Source: Carcharhinus longimanus
Taxonomy: Eukaryota
Reading direction: 5' to 3'
DNA: 63,520 bases
Assembly (NCBI GenBank): GCA_030264375.1
Contig: JASCQW010000027.1
Coordinates: forward strand, 56,731,487-56,795,006
The position numbers and the translations under genes are program-made. Under the pieces are notes generated by a model. It was not told the origin of the DNA. It saw only the letters and a list, made by a program, of their open reading frames with translations, and ran no database searches. Of this stretch, positions 16,361-47,375 are shown piece after piece; the first letter of the stretch is position 1; every line of letters begins with the position of its first letter.

Positions 16361-18291
16361 CATATATTCATAAAATCGCGTATGGTCAGTTGTTCCAATC
16401 CCCAGCGGAAATCACACCCATTTCCGTGCCCAGCAACAACTTTAGATTCCAGGCTGGAAGATTCTGGCCAAGGTTTCATGTTGCTGACCATTCAATAGAG
16501 TTTGCAAGGAATGTCATTGACCTGAATAACCTATCTATTCAGCCATGATTGAATGGCAAAGCAAACTTGATGGGCCAAGTGGCCTAATTCTGCTCCTATG
16601 TTTTATGGTCTTATATATGGAAACTGTTTCTCTTTTCATTGATGCTCTTCATAGATTCACACTATTGAGTATGTCCTTCATTTTCTGTTTGAACTATGGC
16701 ATTCAACTTTGCTGCCAACATCTGTTCATTAATGAATTAAATTGCGCTGGCAACTTCAATGGGTTCCCTCTGGGTGCTCCAGTTTCCTTCCACAGTCTGA
16801 AAGACACGCTGGTTAGGTGCAATGATCCGAACAGGCACCGGGCTGTGGTGACTAGGGGAATTTCACAGCAACTTCATTACAGTGTTAATGTAAGCCTTAC
16901 TTATGACTAATGAATAGACTTTAATGAATCAAAGACAATAAAGGTTTTATAATCTATCTATGCTGGCAATGTATTTAAATAAAGTTCTTGACTTACCTGT
17001 TAATGATCGCAATGAATAATAAATCACTTTAATTTCACTGCAATAAACAGCCTCAAAGTAAAATAAATATTCAGCTCCTAAAACTTGAATCCTGCCAAGC
17101 CCTGTCAGTGGGTTCAATGGTGGTGGTGGTGGTTGGGAGTGGGGGTGGTTTGGGAGGTAGAATTGTTTTTATATTGCTGTGAATTTACATGGAATTCTGC
17201 TGGTGTCCATCATGACAGATGGGGAGGTTGATGGGAAATTTATTTGCATCCCACTAATTGAATGTAGCTGAAGGTCCAACCTTTCCCCCTCCCCACATAA
17301 TTGATTCTCCACGGCGCCGGCAGGAAAATACACCAGTGCAAAACAAGTCAGGAACAGCAAGATGTGCAGGTGTCAGGACTCACGTGAACAATGTCTGGAG
17401 CTGCCTCCAGAGTTCAGGATGGAAATCACCTGCACCCTGGACCCTGCAACAGCACAGCACCTGGAATGTCCAGATTCGGTGTCATCAAAGGAAGTCCATC
17501 TTTCCGCCTCAGAATGTCTCTGGAGGTCCATCTTTTTTCTTCCATAGTGTGTCAGTAACGTTGGGTGCCTTTTCAATACTATGCCCAGGTAAGGCAGTGG
17601 ACTTTGCGACATCAGGTCTCCTCCACCACAGAATACAGCATAAAGCACCCAGCCGCATAACTAATAAGGCCGGAGCCAGAAGATTTGGTGAGTTTTCCCA
17701 CTAGCCTCTGCAGCGGGAAACACTCCAGTTGGTATTTTCTGGCCATTCATGCCAATGGGACTGTCCGGTCCTGCTGCAGTGAACAAGGGTATGGCTGAGC
17801 GCCAAATTCTCTGTCCTCGCTTGCAATGGTGATGGGTCATGAATGGCTGGACGATTCCAACCATCACGTTCTCACCCCTGCCACTGGACTTTGTCCCTAG
17901 TTAGGAGAATTGCACCCTATTTTTCACTACCACAGCAGAAAATAAACAGTGGCCACTCCATTATTATCTGGTTAAATAAATCAGCCTGCTTTTGGTGGCT
18001 TGGCCTCATGTTTCAAATCAAAATGAAAGCTCCATTCTAATATATTCAGCAATGAAACTTCAATAATACTGTAATTTTTCTGAATCCTAATCTGTCATAA
18101 GGAATGAAAATATTGGCTTGCAGAATATTCGGAATAATTTCACTGGTAGATCATNNNNNNNNNNNNNNNNNNNNNNNNNNNNNNNNNNNNNNNNNNNNNN
18201 NNNNNNNNNNNNNNNNNNNNNNNNNNNNNNNNNNNNNNNNNNNNNNNNNNNNNNCCCCCCCCCCCCCCCCCCCACCCCCGGCTCTGACAGG

Positions 18292-18984
18292 ATGGCTCCC
18301 CAGTCTGATCGGTGTCCCTACAAAGAGCAGGGCAGCGGCAAGTACTTCCAGTGCCCGACCCCAGCCTCCACCCTCATCCCCCCGGGCGGCTTGTCCGTCC
18401 CTTCGGAGGAGGAGATGGAGGAGGAGGAGGAGGAGCCCTCGGCGGCCCGGAGCGAGTGCAAGCGGCGCCCCCGGGGCCGGGGCAAGCCCAGGAGCCCCAA
18501 GGTGGTGCAGAAGATCAAGAAGAGCCGGCGCATCAAGGCCAACAACCGCGAGAGGAACAGGATGCACAACCTGAACGGCGCCCTAGATGCCCTGCGGGAG
18601 GTGCTGCCCGCCTTCCCCGAGGACGCCAAGCTGACCAAGATCGAGACTCTCCGCTTCGCCCACAACTACATCTGGGCGCTGACCGAGGCTCTGCGACTGG
18701 CTGATCCCCTGGCGGGCGGCCCCGCCGGAGACCCCGGCTCGTACGAGGGGCCCGAGCAACAATACCTGGACTCGGGGCTGAGCAGCCCGAGCCCCGGGGC
18801 TTCAGGCAGCTCCTGGAACAGTTTCAGCTCGCCGTCCTCTTCCTCCTACACCTGCACTTTATCCCCGGGCAGCCCTGCTCCATCGGAAGACATGTACTTC
18901 GGGCAACCCGAGAGTATCTATGCACCCCCTAAACAGCAGTCTGACTTTCTGCAAAGCTCTTCCCCATTCCATGAATTTATTTAA
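18292..18984 (+). CDS. NEUROG2: Neurogenin bHLH transcription factor (NEUROG2-like), 230 aa, single coding exon
   Basis: b[63 protein letters not shown] with NEUROG2-type residues (KANNR, REVLP, PEDAK, VQKIKK); SP-rich C-terminus [11 protein letters not shown]; acceptor TGACAG|G just before the ATG (5'UTR intron); GC-rich codons. Family is certain, paralog assignment less so. Confidence 0.85.
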
Positions 18985-35620: not shown

Positions 35621-35996
35621 CACAAAAGTTGTTTTATGGAATCACCTAAAATTTGTGAAGACATGTATAATGCCAGACATGCTGCAACTAATATCACTGC
35701 ATCCAAAATAATTTTTCAGTTATCTAAGCTATCCATTAACACAAAAGAATTGAATAAAATGTAAACACTCCTGAATTTGTTTGTTTAAATGAACATAGTT
35801 AAGGCTCCGTCCATCGTTGTGTTCAACTAATCCCTGTCATATTTGTGCACTGCACGTATTCTTTTCCTCAGTTGTTCACTTTTGCACATTTCCTCTGTCT
35901 GCTTCATTAGATCTTCTAGAGAACAAAAACAGCTTCTGCACTTTCTACAGCTTTCACACTTATCTTCACACCTCTCATAACCTCTGCTGAATCAGC

Positions 35997-36155
35997 ATGG
36001 ATAAGGTCCAGCAGATAACCCGCTCTGCCATGAGGAGAGCCTCTGCAATTGAAGTGACCCCAACAGCCCGTCGAAATCTTCAGGAACTGTTTGTCAATTT
36101 TACTCTGATACTTATATGCCTTCTTCTTATATACATCATAAGACTGCTGATGTAA
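35997..36155 (+). CDS. PLN: Cardiac phospholamban, 52 aa
   Basis: Translated by hand: [52 protein letters not shown]; exact PLN length, RRAS16 PKA site, L31/N34/F35/I38/L42; acceptor CTTTCTACAG at 35950; Kozak AGCATGG; AATAAA at 36605; antisense to CEP85L as in mammals. Confidence 0.97.
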
Positions 36156-38337: not shown

Positions 38338-38839
38338 CCATATCCACACACCATTGAAAAATTGCTGCACGTGTCATCCAACAGTTTGACAATGTGCCAA
38401 TTAAAATAACTTTGTGCAATTAATTCATATTAAGGTTATGGGTTGCCTGGTAAATTTGTGAATGCATTCTGTGTCCTTACAGTTCCCTGCTCCTCTGACA
38501 TGAAAGCTCATTTTAGAACTTCAAATCACACAAATTCTTCATGGTGACTACTTGGGAATATTGCCATTGGCTCATGAAGACAACAGAATTCAATGATATT
38601 ATGTCATTAATATGCAATTGCCTCAGCTCACTAGTCTTTAGTAAACACATGATTGCACCTTGGAATTATGTTAGAATGACCAAATAATGTTACGAGTGAT
38701 TTCAACTGATTGTTAGGCTGCAAAAAGAAATTCCTGTCAGAGAGCTGTTAACAAAGCATAATTAGAATATGAATTGAATGGAAGGAGAGACTTTGACATT
38801 TTCTCGAAATTTATTTTAAAATTAACCAATAACATTTTT

Positions 38840-39105
38840 TAAAGTTTATGTATTAGTCACAAGTAAGGCTACATTAACACTGAAATGAAGTTACTGTGAA
38901 ATTCCCCTAGTCACCAAAATCCAGCACCTGTTCAGGTCAAAGCACCTAACCAGCACACCTTTCAGACCGTGGGAAGAAACTGGAGCATCCGGGGGAAACT
39001 CACGCAGATACAGGGAGAACGTACAGAAAGTGACCCAAGTTAGGAATCGAACCCAGATCCATGGCACTGTGAGGCAGCAGTGTTAACCTCTGTGCCACCA
39101 TGCCA
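38840..39105 (-). mobile_element. HE1-like SINE subfamily
   Basis: Same structure as 15555-15856. Confidence 0.85.
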
Positions 39106-39605
39106 TCCCCATTACAGTAGAGACCTTCTTTAAACCACACATCAGCACAAGAAGCAAACTAGTTTGGTTGATGAAGTGATGGAAAGGACATTTGAGAGTT
39201 ATTTTAATGTGCAACTTGAATCGACCTAGTATGAATTACAAAAACTGATGAACAGTTGACAAATGTAATCTACATTTGCTTCATGACTATGAGCATCAGA
39301 AACTCTTGGAGAGATAGTGCTCTTCTCAACCTGCTATTTATAACTCAGTCAATGTGCTAAACATAGAAATCACAGCATCGCTACAGACAGTGATTATAGA
39401 ATGACTAAATTCAACACAATATGGGATTCAAAACTGTCAAACACCAAAGACAGCTGAAAATAGTTAATTTCAAAGGAACAAAGAAAACTGATTGGGTGGG
39501 AAGGCTTTTTAACAACTTCAGTGGAGAATAACTTTAAATGTGTAGGACTGAAATTCCTAGATCTGGGATGGTGGAAATTGAACATTTTGTCTGTAAAGAA
39601 TGTAA

Positions 39606-39647
39606 AATTTTGTGCTCATATTAGGGAATTTTGTGCTCATATTAGGG
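39606..39647. repeat. Perfect 21-bp tandem duplication
   Basis: AATTTTGTGCTCATATTAGGG x2. Confidence 0.95.
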
Positions 39648-40819
39648 AGCATGTAGATAATCGCAAACTCGGGTACAGAATTTTGCCAAGATGGAGAACC
39701 GTTCCATCTTCGGAAAAATGCAGCAAATACCTACGTGTTCCAAGTTTCACCCCTGAACATTTCCCACCTTTATGGGAACAGGATTGGAATCAGTCAGGGT
39801 TCACAAGTGCACAATTTAAATTACCAGCCGTCTCCACAGAAATGGGATTTTGAAAGAACAGGAGTGTGGAACCCAGAGTGTACAGAATACAATAAGTAGG
39901 AGGAGGCTAAACTTGGTGGATGTGCTTGGATAACCAGGGTACCTCTTTGGAGAGTTGAGCTACTCCTTGGAAGGGTTTTGGCCTTTGGTAGAAGTATAGC
40001 ACCCTTTGGGATTGTTAAAAGTGAACATTATTAAAACTGTCAAGCTATCAAAGAGCTGTCTATCTGTCAAGGAACTGTCCAGCACTCAAGAAACTGTTAA
40101 AGGTCTGGCCAACTGTCAAACCTGTCTGGGAAATTTTAAACCTGACAAATCTGTCACCATCCAGAAAGTGTCAAATCTGTCCAATAAGTGTCAGTTAAGA
40201 GCTTTCAATCAGAGCTTTCAAAGCTATCCATGAAAAGGCAAACCTGTCAAAGCTATCCAGATAGCATCAAAGACATCAAGGAGCTGTCCAAGGATACTAG
40301 ACAAGTTGACATGGAGGGGGTAAGGGCAAAGGGTGGTGGGTGGGATGCATGGGTTAGCATTATTTGGCATTAAGCTCCCAAGCGGGTATGAATCATAGGG
40401 CATAGGTTGGGTAGAAGGCATTAAGTTAGCATAAGAGTGGATAGATGGACAATAAGTTGCTATAGGGAGCACATGGGTCATGGATGGTGGGTGATGGGCA
40501 TGGTTTGACATGGATAGGGCATGGGGAATGTATGAGAGTGAAATGTGGTGAGGGGTGAGGCTGGAAGAATGGTTTTGTTTATTTAAACACAATGCCAGAG
40601 CACCGAAGCAGGCCTTGGGCCCAGCCCACCTCTACACCCTGCAGCTTACGCATTTACTCCAGGTCCCAACTCCTGATTCAGTCCACCACCCCTCCCCTAC
40701 TTCCCAAACTGAAAATCCAACTTGCAGGTGGACATGTTTAATGGTCCAGTTCACCGAGCCAGGAAATCTCCTGACTCCACACACCCGACCAAGTGATAAA
40801 AATGTAGACCTAAATCTTT

Positions 40820-41400
40820 AACAACTACAAAACAAAGCAAGAGAAAATGACCTTTACAAATTCGACAGAAAAGGCTCAACGGGCTAAATATCAGACTATG
40901 CAAAAACAAGCCCAACAGGACAAGGAGAGGAGGGAAAAAAACGCCAGAATGGCAAAAAAAATTTAACAGTATGAAGGCAGTCAGAGATGAGAGTCATTAA
41001 AGATATATGCAGATTCAAAGCAGAGAATGAACACAGTAAATGTTCCCATTGATAGCTTCCTACATGTTTTCATAAGAGATAATGTGAGTACATACCTTTC
41101 CCAAAGGAATTAACCTAGGGAAATTCAGTATAAATGAAACAGAAGTCCTTGCAGGTTTAAATAGGACAGAAGCAATAAATCCACAGGAATAGACAGTATT
41201 TCTCACAGAATGATATAGGAGATTGGGACAGAGATTTGTAATACATTCATAATTATTCCAAGGAAGTCACTAACTGGACAGTGATGAGGTACCATTAGAT
41301 TAGAAAAAAGGCCATTATGATACCCACATCACAAAGGATGACAAATTGGATTCAAGCCATTAGTCTATGTCCCCTGCTGTCCTTCTGGGAGAGTGTGTAT
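40820..41400 (+). mobile_element. Highly degenerate CR1-like ORF2 fragment
   Basis: Remnants resembling the KS.G.D.I.PR and W...II.PI.K...D..NYRP.SL regions. Confidence 0.45.
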
Positions 41401-43091
41401 GGAAATTGGGTGAGGCCAGCAACAGTCTTGGCATGACAGTGATAAACATGATTTTTCCAGATTGATAAATCTGGGAAAGAAACCAAACAGTTATTGGCAC
41501 CCATAAAACTTGGAAAGACCATTAATGAGGAAGAAGGAAAATTTTGGGGATTATAAAGGAACAATGGATGTACTGCAATTTCTATTTTGAAAATTGCAAT
41601 ATAAAGACAGTGCTGATAATTACACCCAATGAACGATAATTTGTATTCAACCCACTTGATGTCAACAAAAATTGAATGTTACTTTATATGCAGCATTAAT
41701 AGAACAGTAAATATTAGTCTCTCCAATTTATAGTGTGTGACACATTGCCTGTTTTGCTCAAAAATCCTTTCTCATTAAACAACCAACTGTTAGAAAAACC
41801 TCGCTGGAATATAATAAAAGGGTTTGATGAAGTAAAATGCAGTTTTGATTTTTTTAAATCAAAGTTAATCTGCATCTAATATTTTCTATGAAAATATGAG
41901 GGAGATTTTGTGAGCCACTGCATTCAATATATTGCAGGAGAAACAGAATGTTATGGCTAGTGCATCATTTGTCCTCAAGCTGTGACTAAGAAACATTGCA
42001 GAGTCTTGCACGTAACCCTGAAAAATTCATAACTGCAGGAAAACATATCCATTCATTACCTGGGAGAACAGAAATGAAATCATACACAACACCATATTTG
42101 CATATAAATCCTAAGTAATGCTATGCTATATTATTATTGGAAAACAGACATACAATGAATGTTTTACATGTTATGGCATGTTTCATATTTACTCAACTAC
42201 AAGAATGCTTTACACTTTACCCTAAATGGTCAAAGTCTTCATCCGCATTTAAAAATAAAGTATAAAATTGTTTTTTGGACGACTCCCCATGAAGAGTAAA
42301 AGTACCTCCACTCTGAGCAGCAGCCCTTCCAAATTACTTTATATGGTAGCAAGCAAAACGGTGTCTGGAAAGCATTAACCTTTCCCTCTCAGTAAGATTT
42401 CTCCACCAAAGTAAAAGCAACTCAAGTGGAGGCTTAGCCTACAAATAGTTAAATTCATATCAATGTTCTCAGATATGTTGTTTAGTGAGTTGTGTTGGGC
42501 AGAGGGAGGAGGGAGAAAGAGAGAAAGAGAGAGAGCAAGAAAAACATTTCGTGTAAGAAGATTAGTCAGTAGATCTGGGGTTAAATTTAAATAGGGCTTC
42601 CAATTCATAAGCACATTTGACCCAGGAGAAAGATTGTCATTAATAAATGTTTAACAAAGTGTAACTGATATAAACAACAACAGTAACTCATATTTATTAG
42701 CATTTTTAACATAACAAAAGTCATTTAATAAGAGTGATACACTGAGCCACAGAAGGAAATAACAGGACAGATGACCCAAAGTTTTAAAACCATAAGCAAC
42801 ACAATTCCATTTTGATGTGCAGTTATTAGTTATAAATAAATCTAATGTCCTTCTCTGATATCAGGTGATAGTAGAATTTTAGTAATACACCCTCTGTGCT
42901 TGTGTAGAAATCCTCACGAAATATTTATTTATTCAACAGGGAAGTGGATAAGTAAAAGATGATGGAAAGTTGAAATGCTGAACATAGATGCGTCAGGCAA
43001 CAAAAATAAAGAGGCATCAATAGTTTCTACAAGGCGTACAACTTAATTCACAGCATACTATCAACGTCAACTGTGCAGAGCAAAAGACGGA

Positions 43092-43193
43092 ATGGATTAT
43101 CTGGCAAACAACCGAGGTTTCAGCCTGATCCTGAATTTCCTTCTAATTATCATTGTGTTGTTATTAATGTTTATTATTGTTAAACTGATGTGA
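43092..43193 (+). CDS. Sarcolipin/phospholamban-like SERCA-regulatory micropeptide (regulin), 33 aa
   Basis: MDYLANNRGFSLILNFLLIIIVLLLMFIIVKLM*; 13 of the last 22 residues identical, without gaps, to the PLN TM in this window, with the stop at the same position; strong Kozak GGAATGG; acceptor TTAATTCACAG at 43053. Confidence 0.82.
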   Translation: MDYLANNRGFSLILNFLLIIIVLLLMFIIVKLM

Positions 43194-45600
43194 TTTTTTT
43201 TCTTCTGCTGAATTCTGTATATTCTTGCTATGTCCTGAAGACTTTGTGCAGCTACTATTGCTTTCAGATCTGGGAAGAAAAAATCCAATCAAAATGCGAC
43301 CACTAATTCGAGACTTACTGTGCTACATATCTGAGAACACGACATTCAATGTCTACAAGGACCTTTGCAATAACTGCTGTGTTTCAAATGTACCAATTGC
43401 AGTCAGGACAAAACACTTAAGAGATTCAAAAGTTGTTCTGAATGTATGATTATTTTCATGGTACATCCTCAATATTTCCAAAATCACATGTAGTTATTTT
43501 CTTTTGCAACGCCACCAAAAATAGATGCAACCAGAGAATTTATGGACATCAGCTAATCAATAATTAGCAGGATTTCATTTCTAAGGTGAATCATTCAGAT
43601 ACGTGTGTTTACCCAGGTGTATCAATGAAATGTTTAAGAAAGGCATTAGTGAGGTACAGCACTTATTACACATCTAAAAGCAGTAAACACTGTCTGATAT
43701 CAGACTCTACTGACATTTCTAAACTTGGTGTCCAGAAAATCAGTATTAAATTCAAGCAGCCAAGGCGGAAGAAAATTTCCAGACTTAATCTGATGGTCAC
43801 CTCTCTAAATTTTTCCCTACACTAATTAATGTCCACTCTTGGGGCATATTTTTCCTCATTTGTGAAATAACCTTGGGACAAAGATGATGGTAGATTTATT
43901 CCTGTGCAGATTTCATACCACATCTGTAATTCAGAATAGCGTATATAATGGAGACAATGCCTTCCACTCTGTATTCAGTCTGGAGTAAATGGCAGCCAGA
44001 AAATAAACTCCAATTGTAACATTAGTCCATGATGCCACAAAATAATAAGATGGAGGTAGAATTATGTCAACCCTTTGATATAAAAGCTGTGAATTCAACT
44101 GTAGTGATAATCTGAAGCCAGGGCTCCCCCAACAGTGCCACAATAAGACAATTCAAACATATAGCAAAGCGTATTGGGGTCTGTACTGATTGTCTCAGCT
44201 GAACAGATTAAAAAGGCACAAGAATATCACATTCAGGAAAACTCGAGCTTTGTGCCTGCTTCACTAAATTTAGTGCACTGCACACTAACACGTGCTGAAC
44301 AATCCCGCTTGGCATGCAATGAAAATGACACTTCTATGAGGAAACTGTTTCGCTGATGTGATACCTTCAAAAATAAACTCAAGATTTTAACCCTTGAACT
44401 CCTTATCAAACTCACAGTGTAGTACAATGAGGTTTATTTTATCTATTCATAGAGGGGGGGATTTTCTGTATGACCCTCCCAACAAAACAATGTTTTCAGG
44501 GGATGGGAGCGATAGAAGAGGCAAGATAATTGAGCGGAAGTCCGAAAATAACCTTTACACCATCAGGATTTCCCCCCTCAATTGTCCTCCACCTCCCTCC
44601 AATGATGTAATGGGGATCATGACTTTAAAAGCTGGCATTTCCATTTGCATTAATTAAAATATGATTATTGTTCCACACATGACATGGTCCATTCACATTT
44701 TAGTACCACGTGACACATTTCCTGCACCATGCACCTGGAGAACAGAACCCATTTGAGGCACACAGCTGAGTACAGCCCCTCTGGGGGAGGAGGGTCATGC
44801 CCAGGGAGTACCCGGGCACTGCTCCTCCCCCCAGCATTGCCCTTTCAAAAGCCTAAGTTGCTGGCGGGGCAGAGTCAATCAGAGCCCCTTCTGCCAGGAT
44901 GATGCCTAGGGACCTGACCCTTACATTCTTTTTCACAAAGTGTTTGAAAATATGGTGGGTCAACCCAGTTGATGGGCTCCCTCTACTATCCCCACCTCAA
45001 AATTATACTCTGGAAAAAAAAATCAGAAAATTCTGGCCAATGTTTGTATTGCTTTCCGAGGTCATGAATGAAGGAATGCTACCTTGGCCTGAATTTCTCA
45101 CCTGTGGGCGTGCACCCTTGGTGGACCCAGGCGTGAAACACATTCACAGATGTGGTTGGTCCCAGAGTGCAATTTCATTCTGCATGGCCATTAATGTAAA
45201 AAAGCTCTGTGAAAAGCTGAGTGCTACTGGAGAGGGCTGGGGAAGATGGCATATGCCAAGAAAAGGGAGGGTGCAGGCTGGCACTTTTAATGTGCTCCCT
45301 CAGCAGATACAGCTGGTGCAGAACTATCTCAGGGAGCTGTAAAAAAATAAATATTGATGCTAAAACTATGCCATGAGTGTCTGGAAAGCATAACCATACA
45401 CACACCTTAGTCCTGGCACATTTGTCAATTTTATTTTAGTCCTGACCTGGAATGGCACGGTGGCACAATAGTTAGCACTGCTGCCTCACAGCTCCAGGGA
45501 TTCGGGTTCAATTCCAGCCTCAGGTCACAGTCTGTGTGGAGTTTGCACATTCTTCCTGTGTCTGCGTGGGTCCCCTCCAGGTGCTCCAATTTCCTCTCAT

Positions 45601-47375
45601 AAGACCATAATCCAGAGCAAGATTAGGGCAGTCAGCCCATTCAGTCTGCTCCGCCATTCAATCATGGCTGATTTCTTTTCTCATCCCCATTCTCCTGCCT
45701 TTTCCCCATAACTCCTGATCCCCTTATTAATCAAGAACCTATGTATCTCTGTCTTAAAAACACTCAATGACCTAGCCTCCACAGCCTTCTGCAGCAAAAA
45801 GTTCCAAAGATTCACCATTCTGGCTGAAGAAATTCTTCCTCATCTCTGTTTTAAAGGACCATCCCTTTAGCCTGAGGTTGTGCCCTCTGGTTCTAGATTT
45901 TCCTATTGGTGGAAACATCCTCTCCATGTCCACTCTATCCAGGCCTCACAGTATCCTGTAAGTTTCAATAAGATCTCCCCTCCAACGAGTACAGAACCAG
46001 AGTCCTCAACTGTTCCTTATATGATAAGCTCTTCATTCCAGGTATCATTCATGTGAACCTCCTCTGGACCCTTTCCAAGGCCAGCACATCCTTTCTGAGA
46101 TATAGGGCCCAGAAATGACTCACAGTACTCCAAATGGGGTCTGACCAGAGCCTTATACAGCTTCAAAAGTACATCTTGCTCTTGTATTCAAGCCCTTTCG
46201 ACATGAATGCTGACATTGCATTTGCCTTCCTAACTGCCGACTGAACCTGCACATTAACCTTAAGAGAGTCTTGAACAATGACTCCCAAGCCCCTTAGTGT
46301 TTCTGATTTCCTAAGCATTTTCCCATTTAGAAAATAGTCTATGCCTCCATTCCTGCTTCCAAAGTGCATAATCTCGCACTTTTCCACATTGTATTCCATC
46401 TGCCACTTCTTTGCCCATTCTCCTAACCTGTCCAAGTCATTCTGCAGACCCCCTGTTTCCTTAATACTACCTGTCCCTCTACATATCTTTATATCATCTG
46501 CAAACTTGGTAACAGTGTCTTCAGTTCCTTCCTCCAAATCATTAATATATACTGTGAAAAGTTGTTGTCCCAGCCCTGACCCCTGAGGCACACCACTAAG
46601 TCACCGGCTTCCATCTTGAGAAAGACCCCTTTATCCCCACTCTCTGCCTACTGCCAATCAGCCAATCCTCTATCCATGCCAGGACCTTACCCATGAGCAC
46701 TTAACTTATTTAACAGTCTCCTTTGTGGCACCTTGTCAAAGGCCTTCTGGGAATCTAAATAAATCATGTCCACTGCTTCTCCTTTATCTAATTTCCTTAT
46801 TACCTCCTCAAAGAACTCTAACAGATTTTTTCAGACATGACCTCCCCTTGACAAAGCCACCCTCAGTCCTATTTTATCATGCACTCCCAAGTATTCTGCA
46901 ATCTCATCTTTAATAATGGACTCTAAAATCTTGCTAATGACCAAAGTTAGGCTAACCAGCCTATAATTTCCCTTCTGCTGCCTCCCTGCCTTCTTAAACA
47001 GTGGTGTCACATTCGCTACATTCCAGTCCTCTGGTACCCTCCCTGCCATGATGTGGAGATGCGTTGTGAGACTTCTTGATGTGTTTACCGTCCCTGCCTC
47101 CAGTGATTCCTGAAAGATCACCACCAATGCCTCTACAATTTCCTCAGCAATCGCTTTTAGAATCCTGGAATGTAGTCCATCTGGTCCAGGTAATTTATCT
47201 ACCTTCAGACCTTTCCGTTTCCCCACAACCTTCTCCTTAGTGATGGCCCCTACACTCACCTGTGCCCCCTGATTCTCCTGGAGCTCTGGCATCCCACTGG
47301 TGTCTTCCACCATGAAAACCGATGCAAAGTGACTATTCAGTTCCTCTGCCATTGCTTTGATTCCTATTATTACTC
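45601..47375 (-). mobile_element. CR1 LINE, about 1.8 kb 3' portion with RT domain, frameshifted
   Basis: PGPDGLHSRILK, WNVANVTPLFKK..NYR.VSLT, PQGSGLG..LF..YINDL, KFADD, W.MEYNVEKC. Confidence 0.95.
47048..47090. mobile_element. Tiny Penelope-derived insertion inside the CR1 RT region
   Basis: ATGATGTGGAGATGCGTTGTGAGACTTCTT.. flanked by direct repeat TCCCTGCC; adds 17 codons to ORF 46831-47379. Confidence 0.65.

What the first reader, a model, noticed from the sequence alone, without database searches (positions are those of the whole stretch)
43054..43193. Unrecognised 33-aa sarcolipin-like regulin in tandem with phospholamban
Seen: a small ORF below the ORF-track cutoff, MDYLANNRGFSLILNFLLIIIVLLLMFIIVKLM*, on the same strand and about 7 kb downstream of PLN, with an upstream splice acceptor and strong Kozak context. 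Its last 22 residues align without gaps to this window's PLN ([22 protein letters not shown]): 13 identities, including the SERCA-contact positions L31, N34, F35, I38 and L42, and the same stop position. Many shared residues use different codons, which suggests purifying selection rather than a decayed copy. Established: human sarcolipin is 31 aa (LFLNF...LMWLLVRSYQY). The new peptide matches its size and LxLNF...LM[W/F]xxV[R/K] pattern (K31 aligns with SLN R27) but lacks the RSYQY tail and the PLN RRAS phospho-domain. Inference: a SERCA regulator not controlled by PKA, possibly a relic of an ancestral PLN+SLN tandem pair that was split later (in human, PLN neighbours SLC35F1 and SLN neighbours SLC35F2).
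Basis: partly seen in the sequence, partly recalled or inferred. Interest (0 to 1): 0.92.

Follow-up and report, generated by a model that had tools for sequence, protein, structure and literature searches.

The report
New phospholamban-like micropeptide beside phospholamban
A 33-residue membrane peptide gene sits 7 kb downstream of the heart calcium-pump regulator phospholamban in a shark, is also present next to phospholamban in eel-like bony fishes, and looks like an undescribed relative of the small proteins that control the muscle calcium pump.

Summary
The ORF is real: 43092..43193 (+), 33 aa. Its last 22 residues match this window's phospholamban (PLN) at 13 positions. No other stretch of the window comes close, and 0 of 300 shuffles reach that score.

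It lies in a roughly 1.45 kb block (42938/42940 to about 44393) that is the only non-repeat part of 5.9 kb covered by contigs in three small runs of three organisms. The block's left edge is an acceptor-consensus site. Its right edge is 16 nt after an AATAAA.

Orthologues exist. Two unnamed transcript-derived proteins are 91% identical. Gene models of three elopomorph teleosts (Aldrovandia, Conger, Albula) join PLN to a 32-aa version of the same peptide. Of 33 columns, 21 are invariant, including a polar N-terminal motif that PLN lacks. Eight of PLN's 9 invariant transmembrane positions are identical, including the essential Asn.

Profile-profile comparison with PLN gives 93% probability (E 2.6e-7). 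Pfam Phospholamban scores stay below the family cut-off. There is no sarcolipin tail and no PKA site.

Best reading: an unannotated third PLN/SLN-family regulin, at least as old as jawed vertebrates, probably a SERCA binder not controlled by phosphorylation. Translation, tissue, first exon and function remain untested.

The parts
43092..43193 (+). 33-aa ORF (ATG..TGA) of the PLN-like micropeptide: polar N-terminus of about 9-11 residues followed by one transmembrane helix that runs to the C-terminus
   Evidence: sequence and ORF; 19-residue Kyte-Doolittle windows reach 3.47, against 2.56 for PLN. (PLN similarity). (orthologues).
42940..44393 (+). Transcribed block, read as the terminal exon: 152-nt leader, the ORF, then about 1.2 kb of 3' UTR
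   Evidence: contigs X5 42938-44380, X10 42938-44458 and X1 43006-44393, with no depth between 39192 and 42737 in X1 and X10 and only a trace in X5 (mean depth up to 2.32 at 40177-40570). X13 is covered throughout. The strand is inferred from the acceptor and poly(A) signals, not shown directly.
42924..42939 (+). Splice-acceptor consensus (T-rich tract followed by CAG before G at 42940)
   Evidence: sequence. table 8: contigs of X5 and X10 both stop fitting the genome at 42938 and carry 50 and 28 further letters that fit nothing there. Those letters were not displayed.
44372..44377 (+). AATAAA poly(A) signal; the X1 contig ends 16 nt after it
   Evidence: signal positions. (X1 contig ends at 44393, X5 at 44380). 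The X13 contig runs on past 44500, so this site is not the only 3' end.
43194..43302 (+). Block just after the stop codon that is almost unchanged in the relatives laid (conserved start of the 3' UTR)
   Evidence: table 3: no substitution is listed between 43107 and 43302 in any run, only a 1-nt shorter T run at 43194 in X5 and X10. The list is truncated, so this holds only as far as it was shown. Downstream translations in P0001 also resemble the window here.
42959..43046 (+). Upstream ATGs and short uORFs in the leader (42959, 42962, 42975, 42988), present only if the exon starts at 42940
   Evidence: The 42988 ATG is changed (A>G) in X5, X10 and X13. No ATG lies between about 43005 and 43092.
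35997..36155 (+). Phospholamban ORF (52 aa), the upstream tandem partner
   Evidence: Pfam PF04272 at 96.4 bits. 98% identical to Scyliorhinus torazame PLN.

Best explanation
The ORF at 43092..43193 is the coding part of an unannotated micropeptide gene, a third member of the phospholamban/sarcolipin branch of the regulins. It lies in tandem downstream of PLN and is at least as old as the split between cartilaginous and bony fishes.

Shown:
- The ORF exists and resembles the PLN transmembrane domain far beyond chance.
- It lies in a discrete block that is the only non-repeat part of the laid region present in small, transcriptome-sized runs.
- Near-identical or similar peptides, with the same start and the same end, occur in other sources, three times directly behind PLN.

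Inferred:
- The peptide is translated and inserts as a tail-anchored single helix into the sarcoplasmic or endoplasmic reticulum membrane.
- It sits in the SERCA inhibitory groove (M2/M6/M9), with its invariant Asn15 taking the role of PLN Asn34 / SLN Asn11 against SERCA Thr805.
- It thereby lowers the pump's apparent calcium affinity, or competes with PLN for the groove.
- It lacks the PLN cytoplasmic helix and has no conserved Ser/Thr, so this action would not be switched off by PKA or CaMKII.
- It keeps residues at the PLN positions I recall as the Leu/Ile zipper, so it may also form oligomers with itself or with PLN.
For: Similarity to PLN:
- ORF and 13 of 22 identities; window-wide score 57 against a next best of 31; 0 of 300 shuffles reach it.
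- Pfam Phospholamban is the top hit for 6 of 6 family members, aligned end to end with profile positions 30-52 of 52.
- In the PDB sequence search, 3 of 4 hits with the single peptide and 6 of 6 with the family profile are PLN or SLN, out of 177,635 distinct sequences.
- hhalign of the family against 24 PLNs: probability 93.3%, E 2.6e-7, 23 columns, 57% identity.
- All 9 PLN-invariant transmembrane positions (L31 N34 F35 L37 I38 C41 L42 L43 L51) fall on invariant columns of the new family, and 8 of 9 carry the same residue; the exception is C41>V.
- Asn34 (PLN) and Asn11 (SLN) are the residues described as critical for inhibition through Thr805 (PMC8396278, passages read).

Conservation:
- phmmer over 1.84 billion representatives gives exactly 2 hits at E<=0.001. 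One is 91% identical. The other is an Aldrovandia affinis 'phospholamban' model whose C-terminus is the peptide.
- A further search adds Conger conger, Albula goreensis and one unnamed protein.
- 21 of 33 columns are invariant, including M1, D2 and N6-N7-R8-G9, which PLN does not have.
- All three named models end exactly where the window ORF ends. The three unnamed ones continue with W, which I read as TGA translated under another genetic code.
- The linkers in front of the conserved Met are poorly conserved.

Transcription:
- Contig islands at 42938-44458, bounded by an acceptor consensus and an AATAAA, in X1, X5 and X10 (three organisms, three studies). The 3.5 kb upstream is silent in X1 and X10 and has only a trace (mean depth up to 2.32 at 40177-40570) in X5.
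- The only change listed inside the ORF in four runs is 43106 A>G (GCA>GCG, synonymous), in a contig with 72 differences over 1,521 nt. About 4.8 changes would be expected in 102 nt; Poisson P(<=1)=0.047.
Against: - There is no direct evidence of translation.
- None of the 20 runs is on record as RNA. The tool labels them 'RNA?' as a guess, and contigs cannot show strand.
- The 28 and 50 letters beyond 42938 were not displayed, so splicing and the first exon are inferred.
- If the exon starts at 42940, four upstream ATGs precede the ORF.
- Among the close relatives, conservation continues about 110 nt past the stop, so it is not specific to the ORF at that distance.
- Pfam scores (18.7 bits for the window peptide, 6 of 6 members below cut-off) are under the 25-bit cut-off. 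The pairwise BLASTP is E=2.3 and the PDB E-values are 0.2-0.3.
- Leu/Ile-rich helices are easy to match.
- Named orthologues come from one teleost clade only, probably annotated by one pipeline.
- The Atlas look-up was weak (0.76-0.77).
- SERCA binding is inference by homology only.
Confidence: 0.7

Rival explanations
1. The block is a non-coding exon (a lncRNA, or an alternative 3' exon of the PLN unit). It carries a PLN-derived ORF that is conserved as RNA or by linkage but is not translated into a working peptide.
For: Conservation among close relatives runs about 110 nt beyond the stop. Upstream ATGs are present in the longer leader. There is no translation evidence. The peptide is not annotated in the close relative with a RefSeq annotation: a 48-aa query found no candidate in the 26-84 aa range.
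Against: Shark and teleost versions share start, stop and 21 of 33 residues, while the flanking translations do not align. The invariant residues are the PLN-invariant ones, 8 of 9. The only listed ORF change is synonymous. RNA-level constraint would not preserve a reading frame and a polar N-terminal motif over that distance.
Confidence: 0.12
2. The ORF is not a separate gene but the last coding exon of a longer PLN isoform, as the three teleost gene models have it (a PLN-linker-peptide protein with two membrane helices).
For: P0002, P0004 and P0005 are deposited as single proteins of 107-172 aa that begin with PLN and end with the peptide. PLN's last codon and stop together give a GT-containing donor-like site (my reading of the sequence).
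Against: In the window an in-frame stop (43044-43046) lies 15 codons upstream of the ATG. My own reading by hand of the sequence is that joining the donor-like site at the end of PLN to 42940 is out of frame with the ORF and meets a stop after a few codons. I did not submit that joined sequence to any tool. The Met is invariant in 6 of 6 sequences while the linkers vary. The unnamed transcript-derived proteins carry no PLN part in front of the peptide.
Confidence: 0.05
3. It is simply the shark orthologue of sarcolipin.
For: Similar size (33 against 31 aa, PDB 1jdm_A), a short N-terminus, the LNF motif, and a basic residue aligned with SLN R27.
Against: 0 of 6 members match Pfam Sarcolipin at E<=10, whereas the window's PLN itself does (E 1.5e-5). 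The luminal Arg-Ser-Tyr-Gln-Tyr tail that SLN needs for inhibition (PMC8396278) is absent. It sits beside PLN. SLN is reported in fishes as a separate gene (PMC5684175 passage). I could not look at the shark SLN locus.
Confidence: 0.05
4. It is a chance hydrophobic ORF in T-rich DNA, or a recent decaying partial copy of PLN.
For: The composition is rich in Leu, Ile and Phe. Pairwise BLASTP gives E=2.3.
Against: 0 of 300 shuffles reach the score. Orthologues exist in distant taxa. Synonymous sites are saturated relative to PLN, with only 4 of 13 identical residues sharing a codon, so the copy is old yet intact.
Confidence: 0.02

Closest known systems
Phospholamban (PLN, Pfam PF04272)
   Same: It is PLN's tandem neighbour on the same strand. 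The transmembrane half aligns without gaps to PLN residues 30-52 and ends at the same position. Eight of 9 PLN-invariant transmembrane residues are identical, including Asn34, Phe35 and Leu31. The layout is tail-anchored.
   Different: 33 aa instead of 52. There is no cytoplasmic helix, no RRAS(S/T) kinase site and no Cys36/41/46. It has its own conserved N-terminus (MD..NNRG). The Pfam score is below the family cut-off (18.7 against 25 bits).
Sarcolipin (SLN, Pfam PF05366)
   Same: Size class (31 against 33 aa), a very short cytoplasmic end, LNF with the critical Asn, an LLM-aromatic stretch, and a basic residue four positions later (HMMER alignment to 1jdm_A).
   Different: No luminal RSYQY tail, which SLN needs to inhibit SERCA (PMC8396278). 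No Thr5 equivalent is conserved. There is no Pfam Sarcolipin match in 0 of 6 members. It sits at the PLN locus.
DWORF, myoregulin, endoregulin, another-regulin, sarcolambans (other regulins)
   Same: All are micropeptides with a single tail-anchored helix, encoded by short ORFs in transcripts often annotated as non-coding, and they act on SERCA (PMC8396278).
   Different: No sequence match to any of them appeared in any search here. Those peptides carry Pro, Lys or Asp at the position of PLN Asn34 (PMC8396278), whereas this one keeps the Asn. Direct comparison with their sequences was not run, because none was fetched by a tool.

Membership tests
Phospholamban (PF04272) | Score at or above Pfam's gathering cut-off (25 bits) | tested here: not met
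   The window peptide scores 18.7 bits, E 0.0012. 6 of 6 family members match the model but all fall below the cut-off, best E 7.2e-4.
Phospholamban (PF04272) | Homology of the transmembrane domain (PLN residues about 30-52), including Asn34 | tested here: met
   hhalign probability 93.3%, E 2.6e-7, 23 columns. 8 of 9 PLN-invariant transmembrane residues are identical.
Phospholamban (PF04272) | Cytoplasmic helix with the PKA/CaMKII sites (R13 R14 A15 S16, invariant in 24 of 24 PLNs) | tested here: not met
   It is absent. The N-terminus is 9-11 residues with no Ser or Thr conserved across the 6 sequences.
Sarcolipin (PF05366) | Match to the Pfam Sarcolipin model | tested here: not met
   0 of 6 members match at E<=10. 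HMMER's filters may hide very weak matches.
Sarcolipin (PF05366) | Conserved luminal tail Arg-Ser-Tyr-Gln-Tyr | tested here: not met
   The peptide ends V-K-L-M or V-K-L-L in 6 of 6 sequences. The requirement for the tail comes from PMC8396278.
Sarcolipin (PF05366) | Asn in the LNF motif near the cytoplasmic end of the helix (SLN Asn11) | tested here: met
   L14-N15-F16 is invariant and aligned to SLN L-N-F in 1jdm_A.
Regulins (SERCA-regulating micropeptides, functional class) | Short single-pass tail-anchored membrane peptide | tested here: met
   33 aa. Hydropathy windows reach 3.47 from residue 10 to the C-terminus. No structure was predicted.
Regulins (SERCA-regulating micropeptides, functional class) | Binds SERCA and changes its calcium affinity or turnover | not testable with these tools
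   This needs co-reconstitution, FRET or a calcium-uptake assay.
Regulins (SERCA-regulating micropeptides, functional class) | Expressed and translated in muscle or another SERCA-rich tissue | tested here: inconclusive
   Contig islands appear in 4 runs of 4 organisms, but the runs are only guessed to be RNA, tissues are not given, and translation was not tested.

The most novel reading that the evidence does not exclude
PLN and this peptide are an ancient two-gene cassette that predates jawed vertebrates. They are possibly driven by one promoter through alternative terminal exons, so that one locus makes both a kinase-controlled and a constitutive SERCA regulator. Sarcolipin would then be the whole-genome-duplication sister of this peptide rather than of PLN. 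The gene may also persist unannotated next to PLN in many more vertebrates than the sharks and elopomorphs seen here.
Probability: 0.2. Interest if true: 0.9.

Novelty: new member of a known kind. Interest (0 to 1): 0.78.

Why it matters
Phospholamban and sarcolipin are the textbook regulators of the muscle calcium pump. The recent discoveries of DWORF, myoregulin and others showed that the family had been under-counted because short ORFs escape annotation.

A further member that keeps PLN's pump-contact residues but lacks its kinase switch, and that has sat directly beside PLN since before sharks and bony fishes split, would change the picture of how the PLN/SLN pair arose. It would add a natural 'PLN without the switch' for structure-function work. 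It would also give a concrete place, downstream of PLN, to look for the same gene in other vertebrates.

It also flags an annotation error. Three deposited teleost 'phospholamban' proteins appear to be fusions of two genes.

Tried and rejected
Searches for relatives:
The same ORF extended upstream in frame to 48 aa by reference found no candidate in the 26-84 aa range.
- Exact look-ups of the window peptide and of five orthologue peptides as stand-alone proteins found 0 of 6 in the 15-billion collection. The window's PLN was also absent.
- A metagenome-contig scan with the family alignment gave 433 pattern matches, none confirmed by tblastn.
- The PLN search gave 34 PLNs. I read 32 of them, leaving P0016 and P0030 unread. 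None carries the peptide, and the longer ones are N-terminal extensions translated from the 5' UTR.

Other look-ups:
- The Atlas look-up gave only weak leads, best 0.77, with cardiac PLN at rank 4.
- Rfam at gathering thresholds found nothing in the window.

Other ORFs in the exon: the remaining ATG ORFs on the + strand (23, 23, 41, 34 and 28 aa) lie where relatives differ most, or have no relatives, so I rejected them as the coding part.

Not run:
- Structure prediction, because a 33-residue helix would match any membrane helix.

Literature:
- Seven searches were run. Six of them looked for a regulin next to PLN, or a fish or shark PLN-like/SLN-like peptide. They found none in the Creative Commons part of PubMed Central or in bioRxiv. 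Subscription papers were not covered.
- The seventh search looked for the annotation method behind the three teleost genomes and found nothing useful.
- I read passages of PMC8396278, PMC5684175 and PMC4568590. All other papers were seen as search listings only.
- Supplements are closed and I did not ask for them. The lists of conserved zebrafish small ORFs in the supplements of PMC4568590 could contain an orthologue.

Recalled and not tested: the PLN Leu/Ile-zipper positions, human gene neighbourhoods, and the reading that W after the peptide in the unnamed proteins is TGA.
Full report
THE OBSERVATION

Phospholamban (PLN) is at 35997..36155 on the same strand. It is 52 aa and scores 96.4 bits on Pfam Phospholamban.

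Aligned from their C-termini without gaps, the last 22 residues share 13 identities, and both ORFs stop at the same position. Only 4 of the 13 identical residues use the same codon, and nucleotide identity is 36 of 69. The start context has G at -3 and G at +4.

I scored all 40,025 stop-free 22-mers of the six frames against the PLN C-terminus. The ORF scores 57, PLN itself 105, and the next best 31. Among the 1,890 22-mers that end at a stop, the next best is 25. None of 300 shuffles that keep local composition reaches 57; the null maxima average 30.5, SD 4.4, highest 46. The similarity is not chance.

IS IT TRANSCRIBED

The run search listed 20 runs from 8 studies that hold part of 42800-44300. 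None is on record as RNA. Fourteen are labelled 'RNA?' as a guess. Two large ones (about 2,000 million letters) look like genome data.

I laid four small runs of four coded organisms on 38601-44500. Apart from a repeat at about 38840-39105 that collects thousands of contigs, coverage was as follows:
- X1, X5 and X10 cover one island only: 43006-44393, 42938-44380 and 42938-44458.
- X1 and X10 have zero depth between 39192 and 42737. X5 has only a trace there, a mean depth of up to 2.32 at 40177-40570.
- X13 covers everything, with separate contigs at 41440-43033, 43017-43509 and 43665 to beyond 44500.

The tool warns that contig depth is not a measure of expression, so I draw nothing from the depth figures.

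The shared left edge at 42938 sits on a T-rich tract followed by CAG before G at 42940. The two contigs that reach it carry 50 and 28 more letters that do not fit the genome there. Those letters were among the rows not displayed. On the minus strand this position has no GT donor.

On the right, the X1 contig ends 16 nt after an AATAAA at 44372-44377.

I read this as a + strand terminal exon of about 1.45 kb, entered by splicing. That layout matches the PLN and SLN genes, where the whole ORF lies in the last exon (recalled). The strand, the RNA nature of the runs and the upstream exon are inferences.

A second AG at 43077-43078 is changed in two runs.

If the exon starts at 42940, four upstream ATGs precede the ORF, and one of them is changed in three runs. 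A transcript starting near 43005, where the contigs of X1 and X13 begin, would have none.

No other ATG ORF in the exon is conserved or has relatives.

CONSERVATION AMONG CLOSE RELATIVES

X1 and X5 differ from the window at 11 and 13 places over about 1.4 kb, and none is in the ORF.

X10 differs at 72 places over 1,521 nt. The only change listed in the ORF is 43106 A>G, which turns GCA into GCG and is silent. With 4.8 changes expected, P(<=1)=0.047.

The difference table was truncated (363 rows hidden), so this holds as far as it was shown. The quiet stretch also continues about 110 nt past the stop. At this distance the conservation is therefore not specific to the ORF.

DISTANT RELATIVES

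These settle the question. The exact peptide is in no collection, and a 48-aa in-frame extension found nothing in the 26-84 aa range.

HMMER over 1.84 billion representative proteins gave exactly two hits at E<=0.001:
- P0001 comes from an unnamed assembly. It contains a 33-residue stretch 91% identical to the ORF, followed by W. I take that W for the TGA stop read under another genetic code. P0003 is a second copy.
- P0002 is KAJ8396234.1 of Aldrovandia affinis, which UniRef names Phospholamban. It consists of PLN residues 1-48, a 27-residue linker, and then a 32-residue version of the peptide that ends the protein.

Searching with that end found the same construction in Conger conger (a complete 52-aa PLN, a linker, then the peptide) and in Albula goreensis. 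It also found one more unnamed protein. The three named fishes belong to three orders of Elopomorpha.

The window itself is from a shark. Its PLN is 98% identical to that of Scyliorhinus torazame, followed by Cetorhinus at 96%, Heterodontus at 90% and Stegostoma at 88% (full-length identities from the alignment; hits; taxonomy).

The same order, PLN then peptide on one strand, therefore exists on both sides of the split between cartilaginous and bony fishes.

In the six-sequence alignment, 21 of 33 columns are invariant: M1 D2 L4 N6 N7 R8 G9 L12 L14 N15 F16 L18 I19 V22 L23 L24 L25 I28 V30 K31 L32. The polar N-terminal motif is not found in PLN and cannot be put down to hydrophobic composition. 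The linkers in front of the invariant Met are poorly conserved.

In the shark, an in-frame stop lies 15 codons upstream of the Met. The fused teleost models are therefore most simply two genes merged by annotation.

WHAT FAMILY

- Pfam Phospholamban is the best match for 6 of 6 members (best E 7.2e-4). It is aligned to profile positions 30-52 of 52 but falls below the 25-bit cut-off.
- Pfam Sarcolipin matches 0 of 6 members, although it does match the window's own PLN.
- Against the 177,635 distinct PDB sequences, the peptide's four hits at E<=10 are PLN, SLN, PLN and one unrelated membrane subunit.
- The family profile's six hits are one SLN and five PLNs, at E 0.23-2.5.
- A profile-profile comparison with 24 PLNs gives probability 93.3%, E 2.6e-7, pairing peptide residue i with PLN residue i+19.
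- Under that pairing, all nine transmembrane positions that are invariant in the 24 PLNs fall on invariant columns of the new family. Eight carry the same residue; C41 becomes Val.

The R-R-A-S site, invariant in PLN, and the whole cytoplasmic helix are missing. So is sarcolipin's luminal Arg-Ser-Tyr-Gln-Tyr tail.

The peptide is thus a PLN-type transmembrane domain under a short N-terminus of its own, in a sarcolipin-sized package.

HOW IT MOST LIKELY WORKS (INFERENCE)

According to the passages I read in PMC8396278:
- PLN inhibits SERCA through its transmembrane domain, in the groove formed by M2, M6 and M9.
- Asn34 (Asn11 in SLN) contacts Thr805, and its replacement abolishes inhibition.
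- Relief of inhibition comes from phosphorylation of Ser16 or Thr17.
- SLN additionally depends on its luminal tail.

The new peptide keeps the Asn and its neighbours, has no conserved phospho-acceptor and has no SLN tail. I therefore expect a tail-anchored helix (hydropathy up to 3.47) that occupies the same groove and lowers apparent calcium affinity, or displaces PLN, without kinase control.

It also keeps Leu or Ile at the positions I recall as PLN's zipper, so mixed oligomers with PLN are possible.

My estimates are about 0.9 that this is a genuine conserved coding gene and about 0.65-0.7 that it acts on SERCA.

KNOWN OR NEW

- Six literature searches found no description of such a gene. 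The seventh search, for the teleost annotation method, found nothing useful.
- No database entry holds the peptide on its own.
- The only named records are the three fused 'phospholamban' models.
- Closed supplements, for instance the small-ORF lists of PMC4568590, and subscription journals were not covered.

I file it as a new member of a known kind.

LIMITS

There are no raw reads, no strand information, no tissue and no orthologue DNA. The earlier-findings tool never opened.

Noticed in passing
window 18118..18984 (+): Intronless ORF with a helix-loop-helix domain (Pfam HLH, E 1.5e-17). Its basic and HLH region reads like a neurogenin-type factor. It lies about 17 kb upstream of PLN on the same strand, and its 5' part is interrupted by an N run, which I left alone. 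From memory only: human neurogenin genes lie in the same chromosome regions as two other regulin genes, which may hint at an old paralogy block.
   Followed up: partly
window 38840..39105: Short interspersed repeat. Hundreds to thousands of contigs from all four runs pile up here, with many internal joints and loose ends.
   Followed up: no
window 46163..46591 (-): Fragment of a reverse transcriptase ORF (Pfam RVT_1, E 6.1e-10), probably a decayed LINE.
   Followed up: no
P0002 (KAJ8396234.1), P0004, P0005: Three deposited elopomorph 'phospholamban' proteins of 107-172 aa appear to be annotation fusions of PLN with the downstream micropeptide gene. P0004 also has a 60-residue N-terminal extension.
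   Followed up: partly
P0008 and window 35817..35990 (+): The 84-aa 'isoform X1' of Scyliorhinus torazame PLN is PLN with 32 residues translated from the 5' leader. In the window the same frame is closed by a stop two codons before the PLN ATG.
   Followed up: partly
window 43194..43302 (+): The first 110 nt or so after the stop codon are as unchanged among the laid relatives as the ORF itself. They are also still recognisable in the downstream translation of P0001, which suggests a conserved 3' UTR element.
   Followed up: no
window 43568..43665, run X13: The contig of organism D skips 96 nt here (ends AG..TT, not intron-like). This is probably an insertion or deletion difference between species within the 3' UTR.
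   Followed up: no
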